DNA of 64,000 bases, taken from assembly GCF_052425735.1 (NCBI RefSeq), contig NC_135763.1:35278001-35342000 (forward strand), written 5' to 3'. Below, one piece after another: positions 38,792 through 61,229 of the stretch; within the stretch, counting starts at the first letter, position 1; each line of letters opens with the position of its first letter. Origin of the DNA: Oculina patagonica (Eukaryota). Both the position numbers and the translations under genes were made by a program. A model generated the notes under the pieces. That model was not told the DNA's origin and did not search any database. It saw only the letters and a list, made by a program, of their open reading frames with translations.

Positions 38792-38895
38792 AATGTGCAT
38801 GCGACAAAATTATTAATTTTAGTGAAATGTTTAAGCTTGCTATATGTTAATCAAGTTCATAATGCACGCGGGAAACAAGGAGAGCACGAGAGATA

Positions 38896-39315
38896 CCCTG
38901 GAGGGAAGTACTCCCATAAATTTTGGATAGGGGTGGGTCGCGAAGGTTCTTAAACCCTGACCCTATTTAAGGATAAAGAAAAGAAAAATTGATACCCTTT
39001 TTAAGGCCCAAAACCGAAAAATGACACCTTATTCAAGGGGAGGAGAAGCGTTCCATGACGACCCAAATAACGGCTAACCGCGCACGACAAAACACAAATC
39101 TTTATAAAATTGCTTTACTAATACTCGTACGGATAGTTCAGTGTTAAGATACCTGTTTTTTCGTTCGGGGCGTTTATTTTAGCTGATAGAATTTAGGTAC
39201 CCTATCTAAGGATCACACCGGGAGCACAACGCCAAATGGAGCAAAAACCATACCCTATCCCGGCCAGACGCACATACCTATATAGCCCATATATGGGAGT
39301 ACCCCCTCCCCCGGG
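38896..39315. mobile_element. MITE with CCC.GG..GTACTCCCATA termini
   Basis: CCCTGGAGGGAAGTACTCCCATA at left; TATGGGAGTACCCCCTCCCCCGGG at right (imperfect TIR). Confidence 0.6.
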
Positions 39316-40261
39316 GGAATCAGTCTCGAACTGATTGCCATGAAAGTGAAAATTTAAAGTTTCTGTGTTTCTAATTTAACGAAATAGTCCGCAAAATTAG
39401 CACACGTTAGTCACCAACACTGAGCCGTTAGACGAACGAACGAAGTTGCAGAAGAGACCAAGGTTGTTTATCATTTACAAAAACAAAAACAAAAACAAAA
39501 AATTCTGGAAATTTCTGCTCGGAATTTCCGTTCGGTCCTCTTTAAAGATTCCCCGGAGAACCCGCCTTTTTTGTTGAGGCACAAAACTTAACATGGCCGT
39601 TAATAGCAGTTTACGAATTTCCATTTGGAACGTCCCAACTAGGAAAACAGAATACCTGTTCTCGATAATTTAAAAAAGCTGAGTACATTGATTTTTATTC
39701 ACTAGCCCTTTATTCGTTAGTTATTGTTTAATCAGAAATTGCATCACTTGTAACATATTGTATAACTATAAGGTTCAGTTGCAAGAGATCTTTGAGTTTT
39801 TCAAAGATCCCACACATTACTAATAAAAAAATTACAATAAATGGGCGCTTTTTCAAGTTACATTTGCCATCCTTAATATTACAGTCTTGTGCACATCTAT
39901 GTAAATGATGCTGTATTTGCTGTATATTTATCTTAAGCAAGTTTTTATGCCTATAATAAAATGTTTTATTTGTTAGATTTTCTGATAGATTGTTTCTTAT
40001 TTGTGCTCCTCTGTATCTTTCCTGCAATTTTAGCGCCAGGATACTGGCGATGCAAAGTTTTTGCTTAAAATCGGGGACTCGGTGACTCTAGATAAACGCT
40101 AGATTGCAATTCGACCGAAACGTATTAACAGACTAATTCCGCTGAGTGAGGTAAATAAATGATCACGGAATTTCTAATGAGCCATTAACCGAGGTGGGAA
40201 TATGACGTAATCTTCAAGAGCCAATTGATATGTATGTATTAACACATTTCGACTGTTTTGT

Positions 40262-40480
40262 GGGAGCCCTGGTAGCCTAATGCTTAGTTGGTTGGACTTC
40301 GTATATTGAGAGTTGGTTGTTCGAGCCTTACTAGGGCCCGAGTCACCCGAGTGTTGTGTTCTCACAGTACTCTATCTACCGAGAGGTATAAATAGGCACC
40401 GACGAAATGACAGTGCCGGCAACCTGACAGAATGCTGCGTGTCGACGTCTGTGATAGAGCAACATCCCATCCGGAGGGAG
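40262..40480 (+). mobile_element. Degenerate tRNA-derived SINE remnant
   Basis: GGTAGCCTAATG..GTTCGAGCC boxes followed by a GTGTTGTGTTCT..GGTATAAATAGGCACC core-like segment. Confidence 0.45.
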
Positions 40481-40589
40481 TAACTTGAGTTTGGCCGCGA
40501 CAACTTCATACTACTTGAGTTAAGCGTCCACGTTTTGAGCTACCATGTTCCGTAAAAGAATGCAGACACGGTATTTTTAACATGCATGT

Positions 40590-41291
40590 TTAGCAATCAA
40601 TAGGTGCCATAGGTGTCAGTGAGCGTAACAGGCTTTGAAATCTTGGGTCAAGTTTTGCATCCAATGATGAAAGTTGACTCTTTACTTCGACAGCCTTTGA
40701 TATTGTACTGGGCCGTACATTGGAATGATTGGATCTTCCTCTTGCAGGAATCGAGTCCGCACCTCTACGGCTCATTACGCTAGCTACTCCATTTGAGGAC
40801 TCCTTCAGTTTGAATTCTTTTACCGTTTGGTGAGTTTCTAAGTTTTTCATCCAAATGAAACTCTCAGACTTCTTTTCTCTCGTGTTAAAGAGTTTAAGCT
40901 TTCCAATGCTTAATACTTTTCTCGTCGGTTCGTTTTTCCAATAACTTATGCTAACGGGACTCATTCTCTCTAAGTATTCTAAATATCGTAACTTTTCTCT
41001 GTGAAACTTCCAGCCATTCAGCTTCCTTTCTTCAGCTCCGTCCTTCTTGAGTTTAGCAAGACCCTTTACTTTCTCTAATCGTTCCTCCTTCGTTAGATTT
41101 TTGTCAGCACAATCCTTACGCTGTTCACTTATCTCATACATTAATGGACGATTCCTCGCTATTTGCACGAACCTCAGAACTTTGAGAAGTTTGTTCACAA
41201 CATGTTGAAACGATTTTCTTCTCTTTGGTTTCGGCCAAACAGGCGAAACATGCACAACAGATTTAGAATTTGAACTTAATAACTCTGCCAT
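40590..41291 (-). CDS. Cluster gene 11: HVxPxWP / CaM-binding-like helix / DPRF family
   Basis: ORF 40590..41336, ATG at 41291; HVSPVWP-KRRKSFQHVVNKLLKVLRFVQ; LDPRFQSLLRSLTP (DPRF at 40638-40649). Confidence 0.85.
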   Translation of the reverse strand: MAELLSSNSKSVVHVSPVWPKPKRRKSFQHVVNKLLKVLRFVQIARNRPLMYEISEQRKDCADKNLTKEERLEKVKGLAKLKKDGAEERKLNGWKFHREKLRYLEYLERMSPVSISYWKNEPTRKVLSIGKLKLFNTREKKSESFIWMKNLETHQTVKEFKLKESSNGVASVMSRRGADSIPARGRSNHSNVRPSTISKAVEVKSQLSSLDAKLDPRFQSLLRSLTPMAPIDC

Positions 41292-42291
41292 ATTAAAAGC
41301 TTTTTCGTACACGGCGAGGTCGAGTAATGAAAACACGACTACTTATCACGAAGGCCCTTTTATTTACCAGATGTACGTGTATTGGACTGACATCATAAAT
41401 TTGGCTTAATCCTTTGTAGCATTATGTTTTGGTAATCCTCATTAAATATGCTGTTGTCTTCTAATGTTTTAACGCTCATTTAAATAAAAAATATTGGTGA
41501 CGCAAATGAAGTAAGCACGTAATATGATTTAGACATTTATGAGTCAAACTGGCAAACAATTTCGCACGACTTTATCAGTATATATTGCATCTTATCAAAG
41601 ACCTTTGGTAATAAGGCTTACCTCTTGCGTTTGTTTGATCTTAAAACATCAAAGTTAGTTTCAATATCCACAAATGAAGGGTCTAATTGTAAAGACCAAA
41701 ACAGGTCATATGAGGAGCACATGCTCATATTTCACCGGAATTACTAGACTTTTGCGGAATGCAGATAACTAATAGCCCTTGTATAAGGCTTTTACAGAAG
41801 ACTAAAAACTCAGTTAAGTTAGTATGATAGGAATACAAAACATTTTGTATTTTGGATTGTAAATTCAGCACTGTACTCGCCTCTTCCAAAAGTAAATGTA
41901 CCTTTGCATAACAATCTCGTGTAAGTCCAAAGAGAATAATAGGTCAGGTGACTTAAACTGGTTCCCAGGGCCTTCGAGTCTCTTATTCGTCCCAGAGGCT
42001 GTTTGGTGTGGGGACCAGGGGTAGGGGTGGAATGAAAAGGGGCCTAAGGGAGCTGCGGTCATAAGTTTAGCTGTTTATAATCGATCTATGCCAATTTTGG
42101 AATACGTCACAATTTGAATTTTTAAATGAAAATACTCTTTTATTATATCACGTACAGCACGTTTTTGTAATAAAATTGCGTCAAACAAAGTTATAACTAT
42201 GTCAGCAATTACACAGTTCATTTTGGCATTTTTGACAGGTGTTTTAGTAACCACGGCTAAGCTTAGCAACAATCTTTCTTTGGTTCACTTG

Positions 42292-43176
42292 TTAAATGTA
42301 AAAGGTAGTTGGAACATTTTTCTCGTTGTACTTTGGCTCCATGGTTTCCAGCCATTTCTCATGCAAACTCTTCCCACTTAATCTGCTTTGTAAAGTTCTT
42401 TCTCTCCCTTTAGTCGAACTAATGTTTCGACCCGTACCTATGTTTCTGAATTCTGTTTCACTTCTGTTTGACGGGGGTACAAGAGATGTCAGCAATCGTT
42501 CGAAGCGAGGGTCATTAACTGGCCGTTTAGCTTCTTTGTCGTTTCTGTATATTTGTGGCAAATAAATCGCATCATTTCTTTGTGGAAAACCAACCTCGTC
42601 CTCATTACTTCGTCTGGGCGTATGAGCCTTGCTAAGGTTTCTATGTTGATCTTTCGTTGATGTACTATCCTCAATTTTCAAAGTATCTCGGAGTTTCTCG
42701 GTGGTCATTTGCAAGTCTCTTATGAGCGTTTGGCTTGCGAAATTGTTTGAATTTCCCTTGGTGACGACCATGCTCGTTCTAGGTAGTTTTTGCCATTCTC
42801 GTAACTTGCACCAAGCGTTTTTCTTTCTTTCTTCCCTGAGAAAGGCCTCCATTTGAATCTCGTAAATGCGCTGATGTTTTTTCCTTTGTTCCTCGTGAAA
42901 ATTTCTGGTGAGAGTTACGATATTGTCTTCATCGTCCACCTTCTCGGCCACTTCCGACACGAAATCTTTGAAAGTCGGATTTATACTTTGTAGAAATTTA
43001 AAAAGGATCATTTTATTTCGCACGAGCCGCCGGAAATTTGCTCGTCTCGCTTTCACATTTTCAATTCTCTTCTCTGGAGGCCAAATCGGAGTAACATGTG
43101 GAATTAAAGGGAAAATGACTTCTTCTGTGCTGTTCAAGTTCATTGCAATTATTTCCCTTCTTGATTGCACCGCCAT
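42292..43176 (-). CDS. Cluster gene 12: tandem paralog of gene 11
   Basis: ORF 42292..43197, ATG at 43176; HVTPIWP, RRANFRRLVRNKMILFKFLQ, YLPQIY, NDPRFERLLTSLVP (DPRF at 42502-42513). Confidence 0.85.
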   Translation of the reverse strand: MAVQSRREIIAMNLNSTEEVIFPLIPHVTPIWPPEKRIENVKARRANFRRLVRNKMILFKFLQSINPTFKDFVSEVAEKVDDEDNIVTLTRNFHEEQRKKHQRIYEIQMEAFLREERKKNAWCKLREWQKLPRTSMVVTKGNSNNFASQTLIRDLQMTTEKLRDTLKIEDSTSTKDQHRNLSKAHTPRRSNEDEVGFPQRNDAIYLPQIYRNDKEAKRPVNDPRFERLLTSLVPPSNRSETEFRNIGTGRNISSTKGRERTLQSRLSGKSLHEKWLETMEPKYNEKNVPTTFYI

Positions 43177-46100
43177 ATTTCTTAATATACTTTTCACTTC
43201 GCGGGAGAGAGATTAATATATTTGCGTCCAGAAGCTATTGTTCAAAATCTGCTTAGAAACAAAAGCCCCATTATAAAGACAATAATTTAGCAAAGACCAG
43301 CTAGGTCAATATGAATTTACACTGTTTGGCGTCCAATAATTTTTTCCTAAGATTATAGGTTTTTGTCGGTGTTGTATTTTGTTGTGTTCGTTAACAGCAA
43401 TTACTTTAACAGATTTCGATTAACGTAGTATCAATAAAACTAACGAACAAACTCATGTGATTGGCGGAAAGCAAACTTTAGACCATGGTTCACTTATCTG
43501 GTGTCGCAAAAGCAAATAAAACTTTAATAATATTTTCTTGGTAGGCGCATTATTTCAGAACTGTTATTTGCACGTCTAACAATTAATTACAATAATTCAC
43601 GGACGAAATTCAATAACACTCTTGTGCGAACAAATTTTGTTGTGAAATTAATGTTATGGCGAGCTTCCAAAAAATGAAAACAGTATTTTTCAGTAAGAAA
43701 TTTTGTTATTTTATCTATCTCACAATTTTAGCACAAGCTTAATTCAGAGCCTTTCAGTGTTAAAAACGCCTTTCAATGTTAACATGATCGGACTACTGAA
43801 CAATGGATTAAATTATTTATATTCTGTCAAGTTCCGCTCATTTACTTTCGTCTGTTCTGGGTCGCCTCTGTGTCGCTCTGCTAACTAAAATTTTCCTTAA
43901 ACTTAAATTCAGTTCGATGCTTTTAAATTGCCCAAATTACCGGCCAAAAACTATAATGCGTGGATTGCAGGTGGCATGCACTGAATAAAATAGCTTTCGT
44001 GCATGGAAGAGACAGAATTTTAAATTTTGACAGTATCTTTAAAAAAGTTTGACAGTACCCTTTTTGACAGTATCTTTAAAAGGGGCTTTATCACGAATTT
44101 TAACAGATTTTTGAACAGCTAAAATTTATATTTGTGTCGTAGAAACATAAAAATAACATGAAAATATTAAAGGACCGCAGCCACCACACCTTCACACTCG
44201 GAATATTTTATCTTTTTACATTTTTACCCGTCGAAGGCTGTAGTTCAAACAGCCGAAAGCTTGTATTTTTAAAGTTTTTAAGCCAGAGATCGTTTTCAAA
44301 ATTTTATAATAAAAATAACAGTCCATTTCTATTGACAACTGCTTTATTAGAGCACTGAAACTGTAGTTAATAAGCGTCTTTGGCTGCAGATGGCTAGGAT
44401 AGAAATGAATTACAACTTGAAAAATTGAGGCTAAATGTTCAAGTTAAAATCAATAATATTACATTCTACTAAAATTAAAATAAAAAGTTGGATAATCTAA
44501 TAATCTTAATCCTAATAATCTTAGACATCATGTAACACAGCGTTGAATTTCCCAACTCGGTTTTTTAAAATCACCGCTTTGTCATAGCGAATAAGCTGGA
44601 CTGTGAGTCCACACGAAACATTCTTGGAAAAACGATTCTAATTAACTGAGAAATGCATTCCCAACGCCATGGATACTTTTTATTTTGCTGCAAGGTCGTT
44701 TGTTTTTATTTTCTATAACAATGCACTCGACGTAAACCTTGAGAACATTAGTAAGGGAACCTTCCCCCAGCTATGTGGTTTTGACACACTTATAAAGTTT
44801 TTCATTCATTAGCGAATCTCCACAATAAGAAATAAAACGAAATGTAGTGGATCAAGGGATCAACCGTCTTCTTGTTTATAAAGTGTACTGTCTTGACAAT
44901 GAGCTCCACATAGTTGCATGGGAGGTGGGGGTTAACGAAAAATTAAATTTCTAGAAGGTATGCATGGATTTGCGATTGTTATTTAGCAACCCTTTGCTCA
45001 CGAAATGCCCTATAACCTCCTGAGAGAAGCCCTTTGACCTCTACGCGAGGCGGGGCTTTTGGCTGAAGCAAATTTTGCGGTGGCTTTGGGGTGGCTTTAG
45101 TTAATTGTCCGTGTTTAAAAGAAATTTGTTCTAATTGGTAAGAAAACGATTTTGATTAAAAACATACTGAGTAAATCACCTGGAAGCTATATACTGTATA
45201 CAAGGGTCAAGTGTAAAATACTCAGAGATTATGTGCTCTTATTGGTCTATTCATTTCATCACTGAAGCAATAGACTACGCATTTCAAAAGAGACAATTAC
45301 TTTATTTCACATAATCAGTAAAAGAATACACATATCGATAAAAAGATTAAGAGCTTAAAAAAACACAGATGTTATCCTTATATAAAAAAGTAAATAAAAT
45401 ATCTTTGTGTTGGCGAGAATGGCGTCTTAAAATCATTTCATCTAGGTAGCCTTTGCTCTAAATCATTTCAATGATCCCTCATCGTTGCTAAAACCTATTT
45501 AGGATGTTGAAATGACTCACGAAAATCTCTCTTATCTTACTAGCCTATGGCTCGTCATTTAACACTAAACTCCGCTTATCTAGTGTTTTTAAGCTAACAT
45601 CACTCATAATCACGGTGTGGATAAATCATAAATTACGTAATCTAATACTTAAACTAATTTGGGGACACATCAATAGACAGATATAAACACTAAGCAGCGT
45701 TCTTCATTTGTTCCGTACTGTTGTATTGGTTTTTTGTTGTTTCACTAGGAGACCAAGCAAAGTATAGAAGAGCTTTAAAAAAGAACGTTAAGCATAGTTA
45801 TATGTTAATGAACGGTTGCCTCCCTTTCCACACTTTGAAATCCCATATATGGCAACCTATCTGGCTGCCAGGTTATTCTTAGACTACGTATAAATAGAAA
45901 TGCTGTTTTCCGGGCATCATTTTGAATTATATTTCTTCTGTTTTGCTGCATCGTAAAACAATGCTTTTAAAAACATAGAACGGTTTTTCTTAATTTATTT
46001 TTCAAATATACCGACCACCCACAGCTGTTTTCGTATGCCAACAATTGTTTCGATTTAATAACGAATCCTAATCCCTGTGTTTTCCGATTATCAAAACACG

Positions 46101-46615
46101 ATAATCTGCTGAAACAGAACCAGCTAGACGTTTATCTGTCTGGCGTTCTCCCGTAGCGTTTTTATAAAAGTTTGCGGTGAAAACAACATTGCATAATAAA
46201 ATAATGATGTCTTGAATGAAAGCTTGAAATTGGAAGTCGTGCAGCGCGCATGCGTCGTCATTCATGCAACAACATCTGCCGTTTTAAAATAGATTTCCTT
46301 AGTGTTGTTTACAAGAAATTACGACGGGGGAAGCAATACAAATTTAAGCAAAACTCGGCTGTGTTTAGTCCTGTTTCGCGTAAATTACGAAGAGAAACCG
46401 TTTGCGTGAGGTAGGTTTAATAGCATAAATGGAAGATAATTATATCTGTTGAGGTGTCAAAGATAGGTTATGTATATTGTCTAATTTTTAAATAGCGCCT
46501 TGAAAATTGATACATTCAAATCACACATAGCATTATTTGCATGGTGTAACAGCGCCGGTCAATAGCCTTATGTATATTTGCATTTATGATCTTTTGAAAG
46601 GAAGTTTTTGCAAGT

Positions 46616-47464
46616 ATGGGCAAGAAAAAAACAAAGGGACATCGAAAGGCATCTCGCAGTGACAAGCGAATGCAAAAACTTTACAACGATGCGATAAAAG
46701 AAGTAAAGAAAAGAAATATTAACTTGGACGACTTGCCGGCTAAAAACGCTGACGATGTCGATGAAGCCAGCGAGGAACGTGAGGAGGACGAGCACCTTGA
46801 CACACAGAAGACGAGAAAAAAGCCAAAACAAGTCCTCAAAGAAACACTGACGAAACAAGAACAGTTAAGAAAGCCTAGAGTTTCACTTTCTGTACCGGTG
46901 TCAAAGCTCGTTCCTTTCAAACCAGATGAAAAAGGATTAGAATTTCCTAGAGACTTCCGCCGAGACCCAACATCTCTATCGTGGATTCCGCGTAATTCGC
47001 CGGGATTCCCGCTGTTTGCACCTGAACAATACAATGCAAGACGATCACCCAGTTCTGAATATGGTGATGAATTTGAGAAAACTATTTCTTGCAATGATCT
47101 CCCTGCACAAAGCAATGATCTAAGCGTCGACGAAATTTTGCAGGTGTTGCCTCTTCGTATTGGGGACGAAGACAGTGAGTGCCTGCCAGAGGCGAGCACC
47201 CGCTCATCACAGCTCCCGCCAATTTACCGTCAAGATTTATGGCAGGAAACTATGCGCCGAGCGTCAACGTCTTCGCGCTCAATTCCCGCCAAACAGGACG
47301 CGTGGAGCATTCGTGATCCAGCGTCATTGATGGTTGGGAGACAAGAGCTTTATTCAAGAGAAAAATTCAGGTCAACCATCAGTCTCGCTGAGAGACGATT
47401 CCGCTTGAGAGCTGCAAGCTCCAGCGCCGTGTTGCCTTCAAGGGACGAATGTTTTAACCTATAA
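46616..47464 (+). CDS. Cluster gene 13: disordered protein with LPPI motif and RRxS sites
   Basis: 282-aa ATG ORF; basic N-terminus, acidic patch, QLPPIYR, RRAS, RKAS. Confidence 0.8.
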   Translation: MGKKKTKGHRKASRSDKRMQKLYNDAIKEVKKRNINLDDLPAKNADDVDEASEEREEDEHLDTQKTRKKPKQVLKETLTKQEQLRKPRVSLSVPVSKLVPFKPDEKGLEFPRDFRRDPTSLSWIPRNSPGFPLFAPEQYNARRSPSSEYGDEFEKTISCNDLPAQSNDLSVDEILQVLPLRIGDEDSECLPEASTRSSQLPPIYRQDLWQETMRRASTSSRSIPAKQDAWSIRDPASLMVGRQELYSREKFRSTISLAERRFRLRAASSSAVLPSRDECFNL

Positions 47465-49660: not shown

Positions 49661-50653
49661 TCAGTGGGTGGTTAGTTCAAAGTGAATCTTTCTGGTTTTC
49701 TTGCTGCAATCCTTCACAGAATTCCTTTCCCCGTCGCCATCTCGCGTGCCATTCACGTCTACGGGACGATCAAATAACATTTTCTTCTTGATCAACACTG
49801 GTGCCCAATAAACTTGGTATTTTTTGCCGGCAACTGTACCAGTCTTCTTGTCTCTGCATTCATAAACGCTTTTACCGAATCTTGATTGCAGATAATTGTT
49901 AAACTTTTTGCTTGAGTTGGCGTAAGCGGACTTAACGCGATATTCAGTTTTGTTAATTGACGGAAACGAATCTTCGTATGAGTCTCCATGGAAACGCTCT
50001 TTCACGAGGTCAACGGCACTTTGTTTGGTTAATTTCTTCGTTTGGACATCGCTGTGGTCTTCAATGACAACTTTTATGTGGCTTTTTGGCAAATCGTTAC
50101 TGTCATCGCTTGAATCTGGCCTAGAACCCTGTTCACCTGTCGATGCTAGCTTCTTTCCTTCCACGACAAGAGTTTTAATTGGCTGGTCTTCAGTGATTGA
50201 CAGTGCTTGTAAATCAGGAATGCAAGGAAGTCGAAACTTGTGTTTTGTCACCCTCGCTTGTACGTAGGTACATCCAGGTGCCGAGCTTGATCGCTTTCTC
50301 GTCAAAATGCTGTTTTCAATTTCGTTGACCTTTACGACATCTTTATCCATCGCTATGAGTTTGGGAAATGCGCTCGACTCAGCCGGCGAGTTGGTTGCCA
50401 ATGGCAACATCTCTGTCAATGACTTGAGTCTGCTGTTTTGTCCCTTCCGCGGCGGTCGCCAAATCTTTTCATCGATTACTGCTTGAGATTTCTTTTGTTT
50501 CTCGGCGTTTTCTTTTCCATACTCTCCTATGATTTTCTCATTTATTGAGCTAGAAATGCCTTCCGAGTCTTCGGGATCTTTAGGCTGTGGTAGTTTCACT
50601 TGTAAACACTCTTTAGAATCCAGACGAACCTTTCTAATTGACAAGAAACTCAT
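49661..50653 (-). CDS. Cluster gene 14: disordered protein with C-terminal RVxF (RKIHF) and LPCI motif
   Basis: ORF 49661..50713. Acceptor TTCTTTGCAG at 50666 precedes ATG 50653; putative 5' UTR intron 51145-50666 (AG|GTAAAC). RKRSSS, FRLPCIPD, RKIHF at 49679-49693. Confidence 0.8.
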   Translation of the reverse strand: MSFLSIRKVRLDSKECLQVKLPQPKDPEDSEGISSSINEKIIGEYGKENAEKQKKSQAVIDEKIWRPPRKGQNSRLKSLTEMLPLATNSPAESSAFPKLIAMDKDVVKVNEIENSILTRKRSSSAPGCTYVQARVTKHKFRLPCIPDLQALSITEDQPIKTLVVEGKKLASTGEQGSRPDSSDDSNDLPKSHIKVVIEDHSDVQTKKLTKQSAVDLVKERFHGDSYEDSFPSINKTEYRVKSAYANSSKKFNNYLQSRFGKSVYECRDKKTGTVAGKKYQVYWAPVLIKKKMLFDRPVDVNGTRDGDGERNSVKDCSKKTRKIHFELTTH

Positions 50654-53334
50654 TTGAATGGTTTCCTGCAAAGAAATGAAGCATTTGCGGTTATGCGGTT
50701 TCCAGGCGGCCACTATATTACATTGTTAAAAATATTCTACACAATTTCGGATTAATATAAAGAAAAATTGATTTCTTAAAAATCAACCATAACTAACGAG
50801 AAAACAAATGGAAAATGTAAACAAAAACAATCTGAATATTAGGCCATTCACTAAGAACCAATCTAAAATAATTATTTGTTTTCCACTCCATAACAACATT
50901 GCCCGCAGTGCTCGCTGAAAGTCGATGACCATGACGATGTGGTAATAATCATTTAAAAAGACTCCGTTTGACTCCGTGAAATAACAAATCCAAAAAAGCT
51001 TCGATGTTGTTCTCAGTCACCAACGATTTTTTTTCATAAAAGTTATTTTTGCAGACCATCGAAAGCGTCTGTAATTTAGGGCTACGTTTGAAGCGTGCAC
51101 ACAGACAAGAACATAACATCATAAAAGCATAACAAGAAAGTTTACCTTTTCTTGAAAACTTCACTTCCAGCCACAAATTGAAATTCAGTCGCCCAGTTTT
51201 CGTATGCTTCGGGCAATTAAAGCGAGTTCTTACTCCAGCTATCCAAAGACGCCAACTCTTTAGTATCGGTACTTTCACCGTCGCGAACCCAGCGCCTCCG
51301 TTAACTCCACGCTTTAATTTGTCGACATGTAACTGAAAGTGGTTATAGCTACGACTGAAAGCTTTGATGGCCAGCGAACACTGATAATTCTGTTGCAGAT
51401 GAGCCTCATTAAGTTCATTTAAATTTGTTTCATCTGCTCGACAAGTAGATAATTAGTACTGAACACCTTTGAATGAGTTGCTGCCAAAATTCAACTCCTG
51501 TTTATTATTTCTACGAATTTCTAATAAACGCATTTCAGGAAAAGACTTTAAAATTGAAGATCGGTTTTCTTCGTCTTTGCATTGAAGAGTCAATTGATTT
51601 AGACTAAATTCAAACATATTAGTTAAAAATGTCAATCAAATGCTCTTTTAGTGTGTGTTTTTGCTGCGTTTTTACCCATATTTCATCTATATTTACCGAG
51701 CAGGTGGCATTGGTGCGAGATTTGATTGGCTCAGAGTGTTTTGCAGTGAACAACGCTGTTATTACAAGAAACAATTACTGCAGTTTGTTAGCAGTGTTTG
51801 AGCGTGGGTTATTGAATCCGATTGACCGAACGGTAAACTTCAAAGAGACATCAAATTATCACAAAACAAATACCGTCCGTTTCATGTAATGAGTGTGTTT
51901 TTTTCTCTAGAATGAGACTAACAACGGAAGGCTGTCCTTCTAAGATTGTTGTTCCACCTAAATCAACTTCACGAAAAATCCCCTTCACATAAATTTGTTC
52001 TCCATCTATATATAGGAGTCCTCCCTACTTGTAAGTTTAATATCAAAAGGTAGAAAGAGAAGAAAAGGAAAATGCGAATCTTAAACAAATATTTAAATAC
52101 TTACAAATACTCGACTTTAAAGAAAGGACTTTTAAAGTACATGATTGTTGGAAGTAAATTAACCATGGGCACATATGTTCGTTTGTATTTTTTTATTTCA
52201 ATTTTATTGGCCGTTTAAAGGCGAATATAAAAGCTGCTTTGGCTATTAAAAACAATATAGGTTATGGTTATTTTCAGATTAAACAAGGCAAATAAAAGAT
52301 TTAACCTAGGCTACAACGTTTTGATTAATAAGTCGCGCTTGTTCAAATAAAATCACGGTACAATTTTGGCCGGTTTCGGCGATAAATTAATATAGATAGC
52401 TACAGAGCATGCGTAATTTTGTCAATAGACCTCTTCAGCTTCGTTTGTTTGTTGTCCTATTTCAGACCTCGTGATGTTACCCTTGAGAATTGTTTTTTTT
52501 CAAATTCAAACAACTTTACGTGAAACTGAATGAATGATTTCCAGATAGACAAAGGAAAATTCTCTGAAGAGCATCACAAGATCTGAAATGAGGGGGTGAA
52601 TCTGTAACCTGAATTTCAGACGTCCCTCTCTGGGCGACCAGCTAGTTAATGTGCAGATCCGTTATTTTTTTGGGCAAATTCCTCAATCCGCTACTATTTT
52701 CTTTCAAATCAAAATCTATATTACTTGAAAACTAAATGTTGTATATTTTCAATGCAACTGACGGAAGCTGTTTTTTCTGCCAATCTGTTTAAAAATGTTT
52801 CGTTTTATTGCCTGTTTTTGCGACAATTCCGCCAACAAACCGACGAAGACCGATCCGAATTTCGTTTAGAATCCACGGTCAGAGCTTCCTGACATGAAAA
52901 GTCCGGAATCCGGGCCAAAATTCTCAGCTAATTAGCGTTCCACCGTACTGCACTGAAATCTGCGAATCCACTAGTCTCCCCAAAAAACGGCTGCAAAGGA
53001 GACTACGAATCCGCTCAAGTTTGAAGGATTGTTGACTCGTGGCCAGTCTGTTCAGACTTTTTTCAGTGCTACTCTTGATAATGTGTTTGCATTTTATTAC
53101 AAAAAGCTACCAAAATAGCGAATATTACAAAAACACCTCTTTGAGCCGAGGTAGCTATATTTGATGTTTTTTTAGTTATATTAGATGTCGTTCTTTCATA
53201 GCAGCTTTGTACTAGAACAGAGCGCTGCGCTAGTTGTTGTGCCCAGTCCCACTTCTGTATCAGTGTCAGCGAGATACTCGAGCGACCAACTCATTTCTCA
53301 ACACCAGAACCTCTGGTCCACTAAGTCCACTGGT

Positions 53335-56300
53335 CTAATAAAGTGTCAACGACGGGAGAAGTAGTCTTTCAAAATCTGAAAAGGTAACATAGAACCTCCG
53401 TTTAAAATATATTCACTCGAATTTATATGTTGCGAACAATGTCATGGATTGTTGCGTGGGTAAGGCAGTAGGGTATCAAAAAGATGATTCCAACTTTTGT
53501 TGTTTGCTACTATAATCTATGGCAGACCCAATACCTAATGGCTGCTTAAGCCAAAATTTAAACTGACATGTATCGTGCAACTGGTATGGCTGTCGTGCAG
53601 AAGGTTAAAAATAACTTATTATGCAGAGAGCCGTATACATGGGGAGACTCTTTCTAACACGTGGCCTCTTTGAGGTTGCGATTGAAGATGTTTTCCTGAA
53701 AGAAACATTGTTAAAGTTTTAAAAAGACTAAAGTGTAGCACAAGTACCTTCGTCTTTGACAAAACCATTATTATCGTGGTCTGCAAAATCCACTATTTCC
53801 TGTACTTCCTCCTCAGTTATTTTCTTCCCATACCATATGTGCAGCGCCTCCTGTATTTCACTGACGGGCACGTGACCTTTCTGTTCCGGATCGAACACGT
53901 TGTAGACACAGGTTACCTCGGTTTTCTCCTGTTGGTCTGCTACAATCTCCTCCAGGAACTTGATAACCTCACTGAAGGTTATTGTTGGTTTGTCTAAAAA
54001 AGTATAAAATTTATTTTGAGTAGGTGATGTTCAAAAAGGCTGGTTGATCCTGCAGGTTTGCCTAAGGCTTGCATTTGGTCGATTGCCGTACGCATAGATC
54101 ACTTCACTTATAATTAAATACCTGAAGAAGAATTGACGTGAATTCAATATTTTCTTCTCTCTATTTCAAACTAAAAACAAGTCTTCAAAACAAATTTTTA
54201 AAATACAACAAAGAAAATTGTACCGCTATTACTACCACAGAAGCATGCATGCGCGTATGCCATAGCCCGTATTATAATTCTAGTGATGTCTTTTCTGTAC
54301 CTGCTAACTCCAGTTCATTCAGGTAGTCCCAAGCCTCTGCTTTGTGAATGTTGTAGCCCAAATTTCTGAGTAGCGGGAACAAAAACTTGAATTGTATCTT
54401 ACCAGTGGCATTCACGTCAAACATGGAAAACGCTTCTTCGAATACTGTACGAAAGAAAAGATAACAACAACGAAAAAAAAGTAAGTAACCGTCAAGCTCT
54501 GAGCTGAGAAAGCCGTCACAGACTCAAGCCGAGGTCAATACCCTCCTTTCTTTTATACATAATCTGCATTTTTCTTTGGACTTTCTTTGGGAGAACTGAA
54601 ATCACGAATTGATTGCGTTCTATTAATTTAATTTCATCACTAAGATGCGATTCAGGCGTTTAATTCTAATCTCGATGACATTTTTGTACTTCAATCACTG
54701 TCTAGTGCATGGAACGGCAAACCGTTATAATTCAAACTAGAGTGAATTTATTTATTTTCCGAGGAACATAAGAGAGTGGAACGCACTTCCTGCGGCGATT
54801 GTTGAGTCTGACTCTCTTGCGTGTTTCCAGTCTGGACTGCGCGATTACCTAGGTAGCGATTAAAAAAGTACGTGCGGCGTGTTTGCTCATTTATTTTTAT
54901 TTATTTAGTTGTTTACCCATAGTTATCAATTTAGCTTTCCTATTTTAGAATTTTTCATTTATTATATATGTATATATTGTATTTTACCTATTTTAACTGA
55001 CTGTTAGGGCTTTGGCAATAAGTCAAATCATTATGTTGAGACGTTGGTGTGATATTCGAATGGACTTTTACCGACTTAATAAAATGTAGATGTAGATGTA
55101 GAAAAAGTAAGATTTTTTTTTCTAGTTTAGAGGAGAATTGAAGAGGGTTGCTTTATATATGTCATTTCGGCATACCTTCCATGTGCTCTTTTGTGAATAC
55201 CACTTTCTTCCCCGTGTCTTCATCATCACAATACATTGAGAATGCCTCGTTTACTCTTTGCTGAAAGGCAATATTTCAGTAGTATACATAAGGGAGTATT
55301 TTTATATTCTGATATATTACCGTTACTTCAATCTTTTCCAGTTGAGAGTACACATCCGTTTTCTGGCTCAATCGTATTATACGAATTTTCTAAATGGTAT
55401 ACCAACCAATCTTACTTCCTAACATAAAGCACCGCACCGGCTAACATAAAACAACCACGGGCACCTTTTAACGGGGTATTGACAAATTTAAGGGTTCCTT
55501 ATTGATCTTTCAAGAACTTGAAGACGGTAATAAAAAATATTTTAAACTTTAGGAGGTGAACTTTAAGTCTGCCATCTTCTTTCTCACTCGGCTCGCGATA
55601 GCTGTTGACATACGTACTCTTATTGGACTCACTGTTAATAAAGGCAACCGCTACTTTATCTGTAAATTACCTCTCTTTGTTGAGCTCTCTTGACGGAAAA
55701 TTTCAGATGTCCTTCTGCTTGCTTTAGGGCATGCATCACTTCCATTGCGTATTTCAGAGAAGCTTTACCCAGGTAGAAATCGTTGATCTAAAGTAAATCA
55801 TTGACATGTATCTTTTCATCATAGCAGGCCACGACGGAGGGGAACTTTGAACGAATAATTTTTTTTCATTATTTATTAAAGTGCGGAATAAAAGTTTCTA
55901 GATAATGTATGAATTGAAATATTTTTATTCTACCGCCAATATCTTATCGCCAGGGAATAGCTTTCCTTCTGCAATACTTTTGCGTCTGACATTTGCCACA
56001 AATATTCCCGGAACACCTTCACTGTTGCCGTCGGTTTTCTGTCCTTCTACTAACTGGATCCCAAGCTTGGTGGAGTTTTCTCCTGCTGTAACACAGATTG
56101 AGAAGGAAATAAGAGATAACTACAAATGAGGTCCACAGGTAGCGTGGTGTTTAATTAATTTCTGGTTCATCATCTCTTGGCGTTTAAATTTTTGGTTAGT
56201 CGTCCTACGGGAGATTTACACTTACAATTTTTTTAATACTGGCTTCAGCCGACAGCAGCCACGAAGTAATGTCTCACAATGTCTTTTCTTAAGTTTAGTC

Positions 56301-59251
56301 CATAGCCATAGGTTTGCAGCTTTTTCATGAAAATATTCAGCTTGGCGAGGTTTTTATGCGAGTGATGCGCATGTTTAACTAATCATATCATAGCTTTCAA
56401 GAAACCTAGGCTAGCTTCGGGGTTAATGTCCAGATAAAACAAAAAAAAAAACAAAAACAAAAAAACAAACAAACAAACAAACATAAAAACGAAAAAAATA
56501 ACAATTTTAATTGTTGTTTAACTTTTCCAATGGTCGTATTTTACAGAAAAAGCCATTAAAGATTTGTCCATAAATTTGCATGCATTCAATGCATGATTCC
56601 AACTCAGTGCTTAACAGATTTATAACTTAAAACCTTAGAAATGTTCACAATTAATTAAACTAAAGATTAAAAAAAAAAAACCTTTAATGTGTTATAGAAA
56701 CCTCTAATACCCCAGACCTGATCCTGGTGTAGTGATTATTTCGACAGTCTCAATCTCCGCTCGCTGCTCACTCTGACGGCGTCGCAGATTATTTAGAATT
56801 TTCTTTCTAACTTGAAGATCCAATGTGGTCTGCGGAAATAAAATAGATGATAAAACGGTGATATAAAAATACACGCTCATAGTCTGTTTACAGACCCGCA
56901 ATTTTCTCTCAAGTTCGTCGAGAGTTTGGAAGCAAGATATACTGAACCGCGGGGAATCTGAACGATTGCCAACGCAAAGGCAGAAGGAGACACGATCATA
57001 AACGAAGGGCCTAAACCAGACGTTTGCCATACATGAAGCAAGATCTTGCAAGGGGGTTCTGGGAGCGGTGATCAGAGAATCAATGTGACTGTTTCACTAT
57101 ACAGAACGACAACAAATACGCCAAGTTTTCAATATGTAGAATATTTAACTTAATATAGAGCTATCTACTCGCCGATGTTCAGCGGCGAGGTAGTCCTGTC
57201 TGTATAATAAGGAAATTCAAAACTCGTCGATGTTCAGCGGCGAGGTAGTCCTGTCTGTATAATAACAATATCCTTATTATACAGACAGGACTACCTCGCC
57301 GATGATCATCGGCGAGTGTTCCGTTCTGTATATCAGTGAAATGTAGTAATCACAGATTATTACATTCACATAAAATACAATTTCTCTATAGATATAAACA
57401 TTCACATAATATGTGACTGTATGTACACCCTTCTGGGAGCATACCCTCGAGAAAATTTAAAATCAAGAAGCTCTGGAACTCTTTCTTCGACATTTTTCAT
57501 AAGGTATTTCTTGAGAAAAATCAATCTAGTTCAACTTGGGATTTTTTCCCAACAGAACATATTTTGTTTTTAATTTGGGGTTAAAATGAAGACGAGACGA
57601 GTGCCTCGTCTTGCCTATTGCTAGTTACGGCCCTGATAAAAGCCAGCAGAGCTGATGAAGTTGCGTTAATATGTCTGAAATGTTATTTACAATTATAAAT
57701 TTGTAAACGTATTTTAAACAGTTATTGGATGAGGTTTTTGTGATATCCGGAATAATCAAGGTCGAGATAAGTGTTATCAGCCGAAGCCGAAGGCTGAGGC
57801 TGATAACACTTACAGAGACCTTGATTATTACGGATATCACAAAAACCGAATTTAATAATTGTTTTATTATACATTGTTTTTCTGGAAAAAATAAGGACAA
57901 AACGACTACAACCGTTCTACTAATTCCTACTTGCCGTCTTGCTTTTGAATGCTTTTCTCTCAAAGTATTCGTGGAATAGTTCCTCCGCAATCTTTGTCGG
58001 TCATTTTGTGTTTTCCGAGAATTATATTGTCCAGCAATTTTTCAATTTAGGTTAATGTTTTCCTCGGTTGAAGAAGCGAATCGACGAACTATGAATTTCC
58101 TTCGCTGTCAGATGTGTCCCACATTCCTCTCGGAAATCATGCATTGCGCGCCCAACCTACAGATTAGTGAATAATCTGCTAGCAGATTATTCACTAATCT
58201 GTAGGTTGCGCTGATTCTCAGAATTAACTGTAGGCTCTTAGCCAATGAGAAGACAGATAGTGACTACAATGTATAATAAACTTAGTAATTTAGTTTAGAA
58301 AGAGCATCAAAAAGCTAAAATTAGGCAACTTGTAATTAAAAGTTTCGATTAAGTTTGCTCCTAGTCTTTGCCACTTTTTTAATTGTAATCATGAGCATCC
58401 ATCAATTTATGGTACCCGAAGAATCTTCTTCCCCAGTTGAAGGTCCAATGTGCTCTGCAGAAATAAACACGATCAATCAGTACATTAGCTGTTTGAGTTG
58501 TTATTTTTCTTACTCTGACTTTGTAAATGTTTTTTCCTCAAGGTAAGGAAGAATATCGCAGAGCAAAAATGGAGCAATTTGCATCTTGAATTTCTTCCTA
58601 CAGTCTACAGAATTTAAAAGCCGTGGGGAAAACCCTATTTATACGAATAGTCACAGTTGTTACGGCCCACGTCTACAGTTAGCCTAATTCGACTGCGGCT
58701 CATCCTAGTTGTACTTAAAGGGGCCCGTGTGTTATATCCAATTCGGATAAAGGCGGTGTTACACGGGACAACTTGCAATAACGATTTTTTGCGCACAATG
58801 TTGTGCGAAAAATCGAACTGAGGACGATTTTTCGCACAATTTTTGACTCAGCAACACGATGCGAATTTTTAAACCCAAGTCAAAAACTCGCAACGTGTTG
58901 CCAACATTCAGTGTTGCGCCAAAAATAAAATCGTTGTTCCAAGTTGTACCGTGTAACACAATCTTAAGTCGAGGTGTAATTTAAATCACATCGGCCCTAA
59001 ATGCACATTAAAATAATTTATATGCAGGACGCTCTTACCTTGGTTTCTGTTTCACAATCTTTCGATCTTCTTTTACGCTTTTTGTAAATTCTAACGGTGG
59101 TCAAAATGGCAATAACAATCCACAGCAACAAGACACATGCTATGAACCCGAAGAACAGTGTGTAGGCTACAATGTTGTGTGGGTTTTTGAGTGATTCTGC
59201 GGCTTCCTTTTCGTCATTGTGGCCTGCAAGTTTGGCAAGGAAGGAACCCAT
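53335..59251 (-). CDS. Single-pass transmembrane protein with PDZ domain and calmodulin-like four-EF-hand region (~369 aa, 8 coding exons)
   Basis: Hand-spliced exons 59251-59039, 56829-56718, 56085-55934, 55787-55671, 55260-55176, 54444-54301, 53993-53748, 53375-53335; all GT-AG and phase-compatible. TM IVAYTLFFGFIACVLLLWIVIAILTTV + KKRKRR. PDZ KLGIQLV..GIFVANV..GKLFPGDKILAIND..LKFSVKR. EF region EAFSMFDVNATGKI..LLRNLGYN..VFDPEQKGHV..ITEEEVQEIVDFADHDNNGFVKDEDF. Confidence 0.85.
54700..55101 (+). mobile_element. LINE (CR1/L2-like) 3' remnant in an intron
   Basis: ORF2-terminal peptide EWNALPAAIVESDSLACFQSGLRDYL (54774-54863), then AATAAA and a (TGTAGA)n tail. Confidence 0.6.
57092..57341. 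repeat. Fold-back element with two direct copies and one inverted copy of a 44-bp hairpin unit
   Basis: Units at 57167-57210 and 57222-57265, inverted at 57274-57317; outer inverted repeat TATACAGAACG. Confidence 0.75.
57716..58278. mobile_element. Palindrome-rich non-autonomous element
   Basis: About 150-bp imperfect hairpin at 57716-57866 centred on AGCCGAAGCCGAAGGCTGAGGCT, and a perfect 56-bp palindrome at 58153-58208. Confidence 0.65.
58407..58454 (-). other. Duplicated alternative exon of the TM-PDZ-EF gene (STLDLQLGKKILRVP*)
   Basis: Acceptor TTTATTTCTGCAG; peptide and DNA homologous to the start of exon 56829 (TTLDLQVRKKIL); same phase 0. Confidence 0.65.
58751..58964. mobile_element. 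Harbinger-like MITE
   Basis: TIR GTGTTACACGGGACAACTTG..AACGATTTT / AAAATCGTT..CAAGTTGTACCGTGTAACAC, flanked by TAA. Confidence 0.7.
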
Positions 59252-61229
59252 GCTGAAATGAGGTACAACACATGGACATTACTGCAAGAAGATACAAAAC
59301 CAAAAATGACATAAAAAACCAAGTTTGAAAGTTTGAAAGCAGCACGCCAGCAAGAATAGTCTTGACGTGGGTCTCAATATTGGACCTCACACGTTAGTAC
59401 GGTACACTAAGGAACGTCACTATTTGTCATACAACCTGTTAAAATACTATAAGTAAAAAGGTAAATGACTACCAGATATGGAAAAAGGCCAACATTAATG
59501 GCTGGACTGAAGATTTTTAGACCATTATAATTTTAAGGGTGAAGTTTTTCTGGGATGGCGTTGCTCTGGATGGGAGAGATGACGCGTAGCCATCCAAAGA
59601 CGTTTCTATAAACAATCCTTAACACCGGTTGTTGGTGTTTACATTTTTTATAGAGCAATGCAACGACATTGGCCTAAAAATGTAGTTTAACCACATAGTT
59701 AAAATTTTTAAATGTAGTGAGAAATACGGCGCAACAGGAATTAGATTTCTTTTGCATTTATAGTAATAAGTTTAGTTAGTCTATTATTTAATGGCAGGTC
59801 CACACCAGCCTTATGGTTGCCTTACCGGACCTGCCTCGACAAAAAATTATGTATGTATGTAGGAAATTGTGGCGCTGTTTTTATGCCGGGGGTCAGTAGT
59901 CACCGGAGATGCAGGAAAATATACAAGGCAATTTAGTTTTCTAGTACTATGGGAAGAAAACTGATCATTTATTCCGCACCTGGGTGCATTTTCTATTGCA
60001 AAATATTATGCAGTGTTTTGAAATTTTTTCTTTCACCTCTCTTGTTTTGCTTTTTTGGAAACCTCGTTTCTTACCCTCCCTTCTCCCGTTCTCCTAGACC
60101 TCTCACCTCGCCTCCTCCACGCCACTTTTGACAGTTATTTGTCTAATTCCATCAGAAACGTTTTTCAAGTTGGTGTTTCTATTGTGCTGGGATATTCCGC
60201 AAATAATTTAACATTTCAATGATTAACAGTTTTTCTAAATGGCACGGAACAAATGTGATAATCATTTCAGTTTAATTTTGTCTTTTGAATGGAAACATAC
60301 CATGGAAACGTTATATATGTAAAAATAAAACGTAAAAACCTTGTTTATCATAATAATTGTTTGTTTTTGTTATCACGATAATTTCAGTTTTTCTGTGAAT
60401 AAAAACTTTTTAAGACACATAGGCATTCTCTGTAATTTTGTAGTCTTTCCCCGGTGCAATTTGCGGAACATTTTTCGCTCTACGCACTTTTAAATTTTAG
60501 CAAAATTTTTCAATGTACATCACTTTGTAATTAAAAAAAAATATCGATTTTTTTTTTTACAAAAAGATATTTTGTGATTATTGGTGACACTGTCGTTTGA
60601 CACTGTGTGGTCAATAGCAGTCAATTTCTTATTTAAGGGCAGACAGTTCTATATTATAGATACGTACAACTTAGTGTTATCAAGATCACGTGTTCGGGCT
60701 GACAGTTATTAATTTGCAAACGATAATTTGAATTTTCTGCCCTCATCACGTAAATTTACATTTTCTGAAAAAGAATCGTAAATGCTTCCAACGTACTCAA
60801 AATTAATGAAGAAAGTTTAAGCTTAAACAAAACTTTCACTAATAACTGTGAAGCAAAGATAATAATATTCGACGCGCAAAATCAAAGTATTGTTACAAAT
60901 CACATGTTGTCAGACTGGTCACTATTCGTGAGTACCTCGGACGAGTTTTTATGTTAAGTACCTTTTGTCAACCTTTTAGTTATGAGAGCCTTCGTGAGAA
61001 GTGTTTATCAGGGAGGTCCAAAGTTGGCGTTACAATTTCTTGGCCACCGAATTCGGCATTTACTTGCGACAATTCTTTGTCCCGCTTATTGCGAAGTCCT
61101 CCTGAAAATATTGTCACTTGCTTGACTTCCCGTCATAAGGAATTTCTGACGTAAGGTAAATAACGCAAACGTTTCATTGTTTGCATTTGCCCTATAGGCA
61201 CACCGTCACAGAGACAAAAATACCGTGCT

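What the first reader, a model, noticed from the sequence alone, without database searches (positions are those of the whole stretch)
53335..59251. Hidden gene with unusual TM + PDZ + calmodulin-like architecture beside the cluster
Seen: eight phase-consistent GT-AG exons give a ~369-aa protein. It has a short N-terminus without a signal peptide, one TM helix followed by KKRKRR (C-terminus inside), a complete PDZ domain and a CaM/myosin-light-chain-like region. EF loops 1-3 are degenerate (DVNATGKIQFKF, ELADKPTITFSE, DPEQKGHVPVSE) and loop 4 is near canonical (DHDNNGFVKDED). I know of no characterised family with this domain order. Inference: a membrane-tethered Ca2+ sensor and scaffold that could recruit PDZ-ligand channels or receptors. 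It is also a candidate partner for the CaM-binding-like helices encoded next door.
Basis: partly seen in the sequence, partly recalled or inferred. Interest (0 to 1): 0.8.

Follow-up and report, generated by a model that had tools for sequence, protein, structure and literature searches.

The report
Coral membrane PDZ–calmodulin-like gene
This is a real, transcribed stony-coral gene, already annotated but uncharacterised, whose protein joins a membrane anchor, a PDZ domain and a mostly calcium-blind calmodulin-like domain; I found this arrangement only in stony corals.

Summary
The gene is real. One 1807-nt contig carries the TM, PDZ and EF exons together. It is not hidden: the 382-aa product is identical to RefSeq "uncharacterized protein LOC144657100 isoform X1" of Oculina patagonica. 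The NAGNAG variant is isoform X2.

Pfam confirms one PDZ domain. Residues 233-375 align with the whole of calmodulin (E about 1e-21). The gene is single copy. Full-length orthologs occur in Orbicella, Stylophora, Porites, Montipora and Acropora, all named "uncharacterized" or mis-named "Calmodulin". I found no relative outside stony corals and no paper.

EF loops 1-2 are dead in every ortholog and EF3 varies. The one conserved loop, EF4, always has Asp at position 12, the type that favours Mg2+ over Ca2+. The protein therefore looks more like a membrane-anchored scaffold with a light-chain-like module than a Ca2+ sensor. Structure and complex predictions were uninformative, and the partner claims remain untested. 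This is a lineage-restricted new domain combination of moderate interest.

The parts
60962..60993 (-). 3' end of a non-coding 5'UTR exon (donor GT at 60961-60960). If colinear with the 157-nt contig overhang it extends upstream to about 61118.
   Evidence: The X7 contig runs 157 nt beyond 59254. Its first 30 nt match 60964-60993 with 1 mismatch. The donor was read. An in-frame TAA lies 18 nt upstream of the ATG.
59039..59252 (-). Coding exon 1 (ATG at 59251). It encodes aa 1-71: the conserved N-terminus MGSF/WxAKLAG, the hydrophobic anchor at aa 27-53, and the basic cluster KKRKRR.
   Evidence: Kyte-Doolittle peak 3.08; flank charges -1 and +5. Junction 59039|58454 is present in X6 and X7.
58416..58454 (-). 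It is a local duplicate of the start of exon 2b, including its acceptor.
   Evidence: Joints in X6 and X7. Direct repeat D1: 48 nt, 83% identical, 1625 bp apart. Present in RefSeq isoforms X1 and X2.
56718..56829 (-). Coding exon 2b (aa 85-121). It encodes the basic helix TTLDLQVRKKILNNLRRR and the first PDZ strand, and ends at the weak donor CAG|GTCTGG.
   Evidence: Junction 56718|56085 in X7. An alternative donor at 56702 in X6 runs into a TAG stop.
55934..56085 (-). Coding exon 3, the N-terminal half of the PDZ domain with the KLGI carboxylate-binding loop. It has a NAGNAG acceptor (56085 or 56082).
   Evidence: Pfam PDZ, E 3.3e-6, on this exon alone. Both acceptors are seen. Isoform X2 lacks A122.
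55671..55787 (-). Coding exon 4, the C-terminal half of the PDZ domain (helix alpha-B and the last strand).
   Evidence: Junctions in 3-4 runs. Pfam PDZ spans aa 126-202 of the full protein.
55176..55260 (-). Coding exon 5, the highly conserved linker (REQRVNEAFSMYCDDEDTGKK...) between the PDZ and calmodulin-like domains.
   Evidence: Junctions in all 4 runs. The linker is 73% identical on average among orthologs.
54301..54444 (-). Coding exon 6, carrying EF-hand 1 (degenerate loop) and the start of EF-hand 2.
53748..53993 (-). Coding exon 7, carrying the EF-hand 2 loop, EF-hand 3 and most of EF-hand 4.
   Evidence: Pfam EF-hand_7, E 1e-8. Junctions in all 4 runs.
53335..53375 (-). Coding part of the last exon. 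It encodes the end of EF4 and the invariant C-terminal tail FERLLLPSLTLY, with the TAG stop at 53337-53335. From the contig's own coordinates, the 3'UTR continues to about 52837 or beyond.
   Evidence: (X7 record 18).

Best explanation
SHOWN. This is a single-copy, expressed gene with 10 exons, 9 of them coding. It is LOC144657100 of the stony coral Oculina patagonica. It encodes a 382-aa protein with this order of parts:
- a conserved 26-aa N-terminus
- one 27-residue hydrophobic anchor followed by a strongly basic stretch
- a basic helix, duplicated in this lineage
- a divergent PDZ domain
- a very conserved linker
- a complete four-EF-hand calmodulin-like domain
- an invariant C-terminal tail, PSLxLY

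The family is conserved exon for exon in both major stony-coral clades and has no characterised member.

INFERRED. The anchor acts as an uncleaved signal-anchor, with the short N-terminus outside or in a lumen and the rest in the cytosol (positive-inside rule). This tethers the PDZ and calmodulin-like modules to a membrane surface. The protein works as a membrane-bound scaffold or adaptor. The PDZ domain captures C-terminal tails of membrane proteins. The calmodulin-like domain acts mainly as a Ca2+-independent helix-binding module, like a myosin light chain or apo-calmodulin. It has at most one metal site (EF4), of the Asp-12 type that favours Mg2+ or binds Ca2+ weakly.
For: Gene and transcript:
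- Exon borders and translation check out.
- Every junction is seen in spliced contigs, and one 1807-nt contig spans exon 1 to exon 8.
- The 5'UTR carries an in-frame stop.
- The product is identical to XP_078373520.1.
- The gene is single copy.

Domains:
- Pfam PDZ scores 32.6 bits against a cut-off of 23.2, and EF-hand_7 scores 53.8 against 30.
- Residues 233-375 align with calmodulin residues 5-146 at E about 1e-21.
- The KLGI loop is invariant at L129, G130 and I131.

Anchor: the Kyte-Doolittle peak is 3.08, the N-flank charge is -1 and the C-flank charge is +5.

Conservation:
- Orthologs of 366-382 aa occur in Orbicella, Stylophora, Porites, Montipora and Acropora.
- The gene tree recovers the robust and complex coral clades.

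EF loops: EF1 and EF2 lack ligands in all orthologs. EF4 keeps D1, D/E3, N/D/T5 and G6, with Asp at position 12 throughout. The meaning of Asp-12 comes from PMC2873350.
Against: - No experiment or expression map exists for any member, so location and partners are unknown.
- Both AlphaFold2 runs were poor (mean pLDDT 52 and 53, PDZ below 50). The folds therefore rest on sequence profiles only.
- The PDZ domain is divergent; its best solved relative has E 8.5e-5.
- The conserved N-terminal MG fits the N-myristoylation pattern in 9 of 10 sequences. If that site is used, it conflicts with an N-out topology.
- EF4, and EF3 in Acropora (DRDQEGHVPINE), could still give real Ca2+ sensitivity.
- The test of the helix against the calmodulin-like domain gave no verdict.
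Confidence: 0.55

Rival explanations
1. One reading: a true membrane-tethered Ca2+ sensor. Ca2+ binding to EF4 (and EF3 where it is intact) opens the C-lobe and switches partner binding or PDZ scaffolding.
For: EF4 keeps acidic or polar ligands at positions 1, 3 and 5 and Gly at position 6 in nearly all orthologs. EF3 is near-canonical in Acropora. The whole domain is colinear with calmodulin.
Against: EF1 and EF2 are dead everywhere. EF3 has Lys, Ile or Thr at position 5 in most species and Ala at position 12 in one (P0002). EF4 has Asp-12 in all orthologs, a type reported to favour Mg2+ (PMC2873350). In Stylophora EF4 is further degraded (DEENTGFCREQD). A lone site without a paired functional EF-hand usually binds weakly (my own knowledge).
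Confidence: 0.25
2. A self-binding module. The invariant C-terminal tail PSLxLY-COOH docks into the protein's own PDZ groove. In cis this would auto-inhibit the protein; in trans it would build head-to-tail arrays on the membrane. This could coexist with the scaffold model.
For: The tail is the most conserved segment (93% mean identity), with P377, S378, L379, L381 and Y382 invariant, and it is kept in L008. The residue aligned with the PDZ alpha-B1 position is a nearly invariant Leu (L183). That would suit a hydrophobic residue at position -2, which is V, M or I in the Acropora, Montipora and Porites sequences and in P0153 (the alignment to PSD-95 is my own inference).
Against: Position -2, the class-defining ligand position, is the only variable residue of the tail (T, V, M, I or K). 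Tyr at position 0 is unusual for PDZ ligands (my own knowledge). The AlphaFold2 models did not dock the tail; there it has pLDDT below 50. The tail could instead simply cap the last EF helix.
Confidence: 0.2
3. A different membrane anchor. The N-terminal Gly2 is myristoylated, and the hydrophobic stretch forms a monotopic or hairpin anchor with both ends in the cytosol, as in NADH-cytochrome b5 reductase. It would not then be a bilayer-spanning type III helix.
For: The N-terminus MG[SL]WxAK is conserved, and the PROSITE-type pattern G-{EDRKHPFYW}-x(2)-[STAGCN]-{P} is met in 9 of 10 sequences, L008 among them. F34 and G35 are invariant inside the hydrophobic stretch.
Against: A stretch of 27 hydrophobic residues without a central Pro or a polar break fits one spanning helix better than a hairpin. 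One transcript-derived ortholog (P0153) starts MSFGTW, with no Met-Gly. The pattern is short and matches often by chance.
Confidence: 0.2
4. An artefact: the TM, PDZ and EF exons belong to separate genes, or the open frame arose by chance.
For: None was found. Only the weak donor at 56717 and an unproductive alternative donor at 56702 hint at noisy splicing.
Against: One contig spans all coding exons. The same architecture occurs in at least 8 named coral species and is independently annotated. Intron positions and phases are conserved in L008.
Confidence: 0.02

Closest known systems
Calmodulin (e.g. PDB 1CLL-type chains; best solved relatives)
   Same: Four EF-hands in the same order and spacing. 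Residues 233-375 align with calmodulin residues 5-146 at E about 1e-21.
   Different: Three of the four loops lack the Ca2+ ligands, and the fourth has Asp rather than Glu at position 12. The domain is fused to a PDZ domain and a membrane anchor and carries an extra invariant six-residue tail.
Calneurons / CaBP7 and CaBP8 (PMC3062558, PMC6372560, PMC2873350)
   Same: Calmodulin-like proteins held on a membrane by one hydrophobic helix, with the EF-hand domain in the cytosol and only some EF-hands active.
   Different: Calneurons are tail-anchored at the C-terminus, have no PDZ domain, have active EF1-2 and inactive EF3-4, and are a vertebrate family. Here the anchor is N-terminal and EF4 is the only conserved site. 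There is no sign of common descent beyond the EF-hand superfamily.
Myosin essential light chains / apo-calmodulin bound to IQ motifs (my own knowledge)
   Same: Calmodulin-fold modules with degenerate loops that bind helices largely without Ca2+. This is what the domain most probably works like.
   Different: No myosin and no strict IQ motif is present. The juxtamembrane LQVRKK helix only partly fits [ILV]QxxxRGxxx[RK]. Binding was not supported or refuted.
Membrane-anchored single-PDZ proteins such as SYNJ2BP/OMP25 and PDZD8 (my own knowledge)
   Same: One PDZ domain held at a membrane surface by a single hydrophobic helix, acting as a tether or adaptor.
   Different: SYNJ2BP is tail-anchored. 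PDZD8 carries SMP and C1 domains. Neither has EF-hands. No sequence relationship was found beyond the PDZ superfamily; the best solved PDZ relatives are InaD-like and Dishevelled, E 1e-4 to 1e-3.
PDZ scaffolds that bind a separate EF-hand protein, e.g. INAD-calmodulin or whirlin-CIB2 (my own knowledge)
   Same: A PDZ scaffold combined with a calmodulin-type module at a membrane.
   Different: In those systems the two are separate polypeptides. Here they are fused and membrane-anchored.

Membership tests
PDZ domain (Pfam PF00595) | Profile score above Pfam's gathering threshold | tested here: met
   32.6 bits against a cut-off of 23.2, aa 126-202. Orthologs score 35.7 and 38.2 bits.
PDZ domain (Pfam PF00595) | Carboxylate-binding loop x-Phi-G-Phi before strand beta-2 | tested here: met
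   K128-L129-G130-I131, with L129, G130 and I131 invariant in 10 orthologs. L008 has VLGV.
PDZ domain (Pfam PF00595) | Six-stranded beta-sandwich with two helices | tested here: inconclusive
   The AlphaFold2 secondary-structure order fits, but pLDDT is below 50 over the domain. No fold search was attempted on such models.
Calmodulin / calmodulin-like EF-hand proteins (PF13499) | Two pairs of EF-hands colinear with calmodulin | tested here: met
   phmmer against PDB: query residues 9-151 of the 225-382 fragment align with calmodulin 5-146, E 1e-21 to 1e-20. Pfam EF-hand_7 scores 53.8 bits.
Calmodulin proper (Ca2+ sensor) | Four canonical 12-residue loops with ligands at positions 1, 3 and 5 and Glu at 12 | tested here: not met
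   EF1 is DVNATGKIQFKF (Phe at 12). EF2 is ELADKPTITFSE (Ala at 3, Lys at 5). EF3 is DPEQKGHVPVSE (Lys at 5). EF4 is DHDNNGFVKDED (Asp at 12). The same pattern holds in the orthologs.
Calneuron / CaBP7-8 | C-terminal tail-anchor helix after the EF-hand domain | tested here: not met
   The only hydrophobic stretch is at aa 27-53, N-terminal to all domains. The C-terminus is the polar/aliphatic tail PSLTLY.
Type III (N-out, C-in) signal-anchor membrane proteins | A single long hydrophobic helix, no cleavable signal peptide, and more positive charge on the C-terminal flank | tested here: met
   19-residue Kyte-Doolittle peak of 3.08 at aa 32-50. N-flank charge is -1 and C-flank charge is +5. The helix starts 26 residues from the N-terminus.
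Type III (N-out, C-in) signal-anchor membrane proteins | Experimentally determined topology | not testable with these tools
   Needs protease protection or glycosylation scanning.
IQ motif (light-chain / apo-calmodulin binding helix) | [ILV]QxxxRGxxx[RK] consensus | tested here: not met
   L89-Q90-V-R-K-K94 fits the first half. Position 7 is Ile and the second basic residue is one place out of register. L008 lacks the LQ altogether.
N-myristoylated proteins | N-terminal M-G-{EDRKHPFYW}-x-x-[STAGCN]-{P} | tested here: met
   The pattern is met in 9 of 10 family sequences. Whether the site is actually modified cannot be tested here.

The most novel reading that the evidence does not exclude
This may be a stony-coral invention: a membrane-anchored PDZ-calmodulin-like adaptor that arose at or before the origin of Scleractinia. 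It would couple the divalent-cation state at a specific membrane (for example of calcifying or symbiont-hosting cells) to PDZ-bound transporters or channels. It would then be a lineage-specific part of coral Ca2+ handling.
Probability: 0.1. Interest if true: 0.7.

Novelty: new variant of a known kind. Interest (0 to 1): 0.4.

Why it matters
Stony corals build reefs by moving large amounts of Ca2+ across epithelia, and few coral-restricted components of membrane signalling are known. This family combines three common modules in an order not seen elsewhere in my searches. It is single copy and expressed. It has been kept exon for exon since the split of the two major stony-coral clades, which argues for a maintained function. 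It is a clean candidate for a first functional study: where it sits, which cells express it, and what its PDZ domain binds. On the other hand, PDZ and EF-hand domains are among the most often reshuffled animal domains, so a new combination is not a surprise in itself. Nothing yet ties the protein to calcification or symbiosis.

Tried and rejected
1. AlphaFold2 on the full length with 10 orthologs gave mean pLDDT 52. On residues 106-382 with 14 orthologs it gave 53. Both are too poor for fold searches or for judging domain contacts, so none were run.
2. Complex prediction, juxtamembrane helix (66-112) against the calmodulin-like domain (228-382): score 0.01, no verdict. This counts neither for nor against binding.
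3. ESM Atlas by features returned only a generic EF-hand cluster at 0.83, below the useful range.
4. A search with the PDZ+linker region alone found only orthologs.
5. Ten of the nearest non-family EF-hand relatives of 290-430 aa showed no PDZ in Pfam. A family PDZ profile hit none of the 150 nearest EF-hand relatives outside the family.
6. Paper searches found nothing relevant. I tried the domain combination in corals, twelve gene and protein accessions and three sample accessions. The held supplements of the Stylophora cell atlas (PMC8162421) do not contain XP_022805426, so no cell-type assignment was possible.
7. The two nearest single-exon ORFs (49664-50713 minus strand, 46616-47461 plus strand) have no Pfam family.
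8. I rejected the GenBank 396-aa start (14 extra residues). The RNA contig's 5'UTR exon carries an in-frame TAA.
9. I rejected the acidic di-leucine reading of DFERLL. It lies in the last EF-hand helix, and D370 is loop position 12.
Full report
THE OBSERVATION

All have GT-AG borders and consistent phases. They give a 369-aa product with the KKRKRR cluster and the four quoted EF loops.

I laid Logan contigs of four runs from four studies on 53300-59290. They are labelled "RNA?", but their contigs skip the introns precisely, which shows spliced RNA.
- The five junctions from exon 8 to exon 3 are present in three or four runs each.
- The weak donor (junction 56718|56085) is used in X7.
- X6 shows the NAGNAG alternative at 56082. 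It also shows an alternative donor at 56702 that runs into a TAG.
- X7 record 18 (1807 nt) carries exon 1 through exon 8 in one molecule.

First, in X6 and X7 exon 1 is joined to a 39-nt exon (58454-58416), and that exon is joined to exon 2b. The aligner placed the second joint 2 nt off the canonical sites (56831|58418). This is explained if those animals read CAG where this genome has CGG; length and frame are unchanged either way. The small exon encodes STLDLQLGKKILR. It is a local duplicate of the start of exon 2b, acceptor included (48 nt, 83% identical).

Second, the X7 contig continues 157 nt beyond the acceptor that lies 1 nt upstream of the ATG. The first 30 nt of that overhang map to 60964-60993, which end in a GT donor. 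The exon carries an in-frame TAA 18 nt upstream of the ATG, so the start codon is well supported.

IDENTITY

An exhaustive HMMER search with exon 7 gave full-length relatives. A word-indexed search with one of them returned a 382-aa protein that is letter for letter my nine-exon translation. It is [quoted passage not shown], XP_078373520.1/XP_078373521.1, on a 38.5-Mb chromosome. That fits the window's position on contig C6.
- Isoform X2 (381 aa) lacks A122, which is the NAGNAG variant.
- A GenBank model (KAL9971177.1, 396 aa) adds 14 N-terminal residues. The RNA contig does not support them.

So the gene is annotated, not hidden, but nobody has characterised it.

DOMAINS
- On the full protein, Pfam gives PDZ at 126-202 (32.6 bits, cut-off 23.2) and EF-hand pair families (53.8 bits).
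- Against solved structures, residues 233-375 align with essentially all of calmodulin (5-146) at E about 1e-21.
- The PDZ domain is divergent. Its best solved relatives are InaD-like and Dishevelled PDZ domains at E 1e-4 to 1e-3.
- The hydrophobic stretch at aa 27-53 has a Kyte-Doolittle peak of 3.08, an N-flank charge of -1 and a C-flank charge of +5. By the positive-inside rule this predicts a short N-terminus outside and the domains in the cytosol.

FAMILY

Orthologs of 366-382 aa with the same Pfam content occur in Orbicella faveolata, Stylophora pistillata, four Porites species, two Montipora and four Acropora species. All are "uncharacterized", or are mis-modelled entries named "Calmodulin".
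- An unnamed ENA genome (L008) encodes the gene with the same eight coding exons and phases.
- A maximum-likelihood tree recovers Stylophora+Oculina+Orbicella against Porites+Montipora+Acropora, with L008 on a long branch beside the latter group. The gene therefore predates the split of the two major stony-coral clades.
- The gene is single copy in this genome.
- No named hit lies outside Scleractinia.
- None of the 150 nearest EF-hand relatives among 1.84 billion representatives carries this PDZ domain. A search with the PDZ+linker region finds only orthologs.
- Exon 2a is present in Oculina and Orbicella only. A close relative's transcripts (P0002) lack it.

WHAT THE CONSERVATION SAYS
- The most conserved parts are the C-terminal tail FERLLLPSLxLY (93%), the PDZ-EF linker (73%) and the N-lobe (69%).
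- EF1 never has an acidic residue at position 12. EF2 has Ala, Thr or Ser at position 3 and Lys at position 5 throughout. EF3 varies: Lys, Thr, Ile or Glu at position 5, and Ala at position 12 in one sequence.
- EF4 keeps D1, D/E3, N/D/T5 and G6. It has Asp at position 12 in every sequence, including L008.
- Substitution of Glu-12 by Asp is reported to diminish Ca2+ binding in favour of Mg2+, and CaBP1 EF1 is constitutively Mg2+-bound (PMC2873350).

The module is therefore closer in kind to a light chain or apo-calmodulin than to a Ca2+ switch. Weak Ca2+ sensitivity is not excluded.

OPEN FEATURES
- The N-terminus MG[SL]WxAK fits the N-myristoylation pattern in 9 of 10 sequences. If used, this clashes with an N-out topology.
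- The tail could be a ligand for the protein's own PDZ domain. The residue aligned with alpha-B1 is a near-invariant Leu. However, ligand position -2 is the only variable residue of the tail.
- The LQVRKK helix is only IQ-like, and it is not kept in L008.

PREDICTIONS THAT DID NOT HELP

Both AlphaFold2 runs gave mean pLDDT of about 52-53. The helix against calmodulin-like complex test gave no verdict.

CONTEXT

Three downstream neighbours, at 46.6, 42.3-43.2 and 38.5 kb, are colinear with ORFs downstream of the L008 ortholog. The neighbourhood is therefore old.

VERDICT

This is a real and correctly located gene, with one small exon and the 5'UTR missed. The domain combination is genuinely unusual and restricted to stony corals, and it is already in the databases without a function. 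The best reading is a membrane-anchored PDZ scaffold with a largely Ca2+-independent calmodulin-like module. Interest is moderate.

Noticed in passing
window 57500-58300 (intron between exons 2a and 2b): Near-perfect palindromes lie at 57716-57864 (73-nt arms), 58150-58211 (31-nt arms) and 57167-57320 (nested 47-51-nt arms). Summed RNA-contig depth over 57500-58300 reaches the hundreds to thousands, with many loose ends. They look like MITE-type repeats transcribed from many genomic copies.
   Followed up: partly
window 38465-47461 versus L008:12931-17746: Three neighbouring ORFs are colinear, in the same relative orientation, with ORFs downstream of the ortholog in a distant unnamed coral genome. 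They are 46598-47461 (+), 42295-43212 (-) and 38465-38788 (+), at 39-53% identity. The 350-aa ORF at 49661-50713 has no counterpart there. None of the ORFs tested has a Pfam family.
   Followed up: partly
window 56702-56717: One X6 contig uses a donor 16 nt downstream of the main weak donor. The extension reads into a TAG, so this isoform would end after the juxtamembrane helix. It is probably splicing noise.
   Followed up: no
window 58417 (exon 2a, last codon): The X6 and X7 contigs appear to read CAG (Gln) where this genome has CGG (Arg84). Orbicella also has Gln at this position. Many laid contigs are only 95-99% identical, so these runs may come from other populations or sister species.
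   Followed up: no
G000:C6:17898505-17917460 (loci L003-L006): Four EF-hand exons lie within 19 kb on the same chromosome, each about 30% identical to exon 7. This is a tandem cluster of calmodulin-like genes unrelated to the gene studied here.
   Followed up: no
protein aa 207-248 (window exons 5-6): The linker repeats the start of EF-hand 1: NEAFSMY followed by an acidic DDEDTGK stretch, 24 residues before FEEAFSMFD. This looks like a degenerate fifth half-EF-hand and is highly conserved. It may glue the PDZ domain to the calmodulin-like domain.
   Followed up: no
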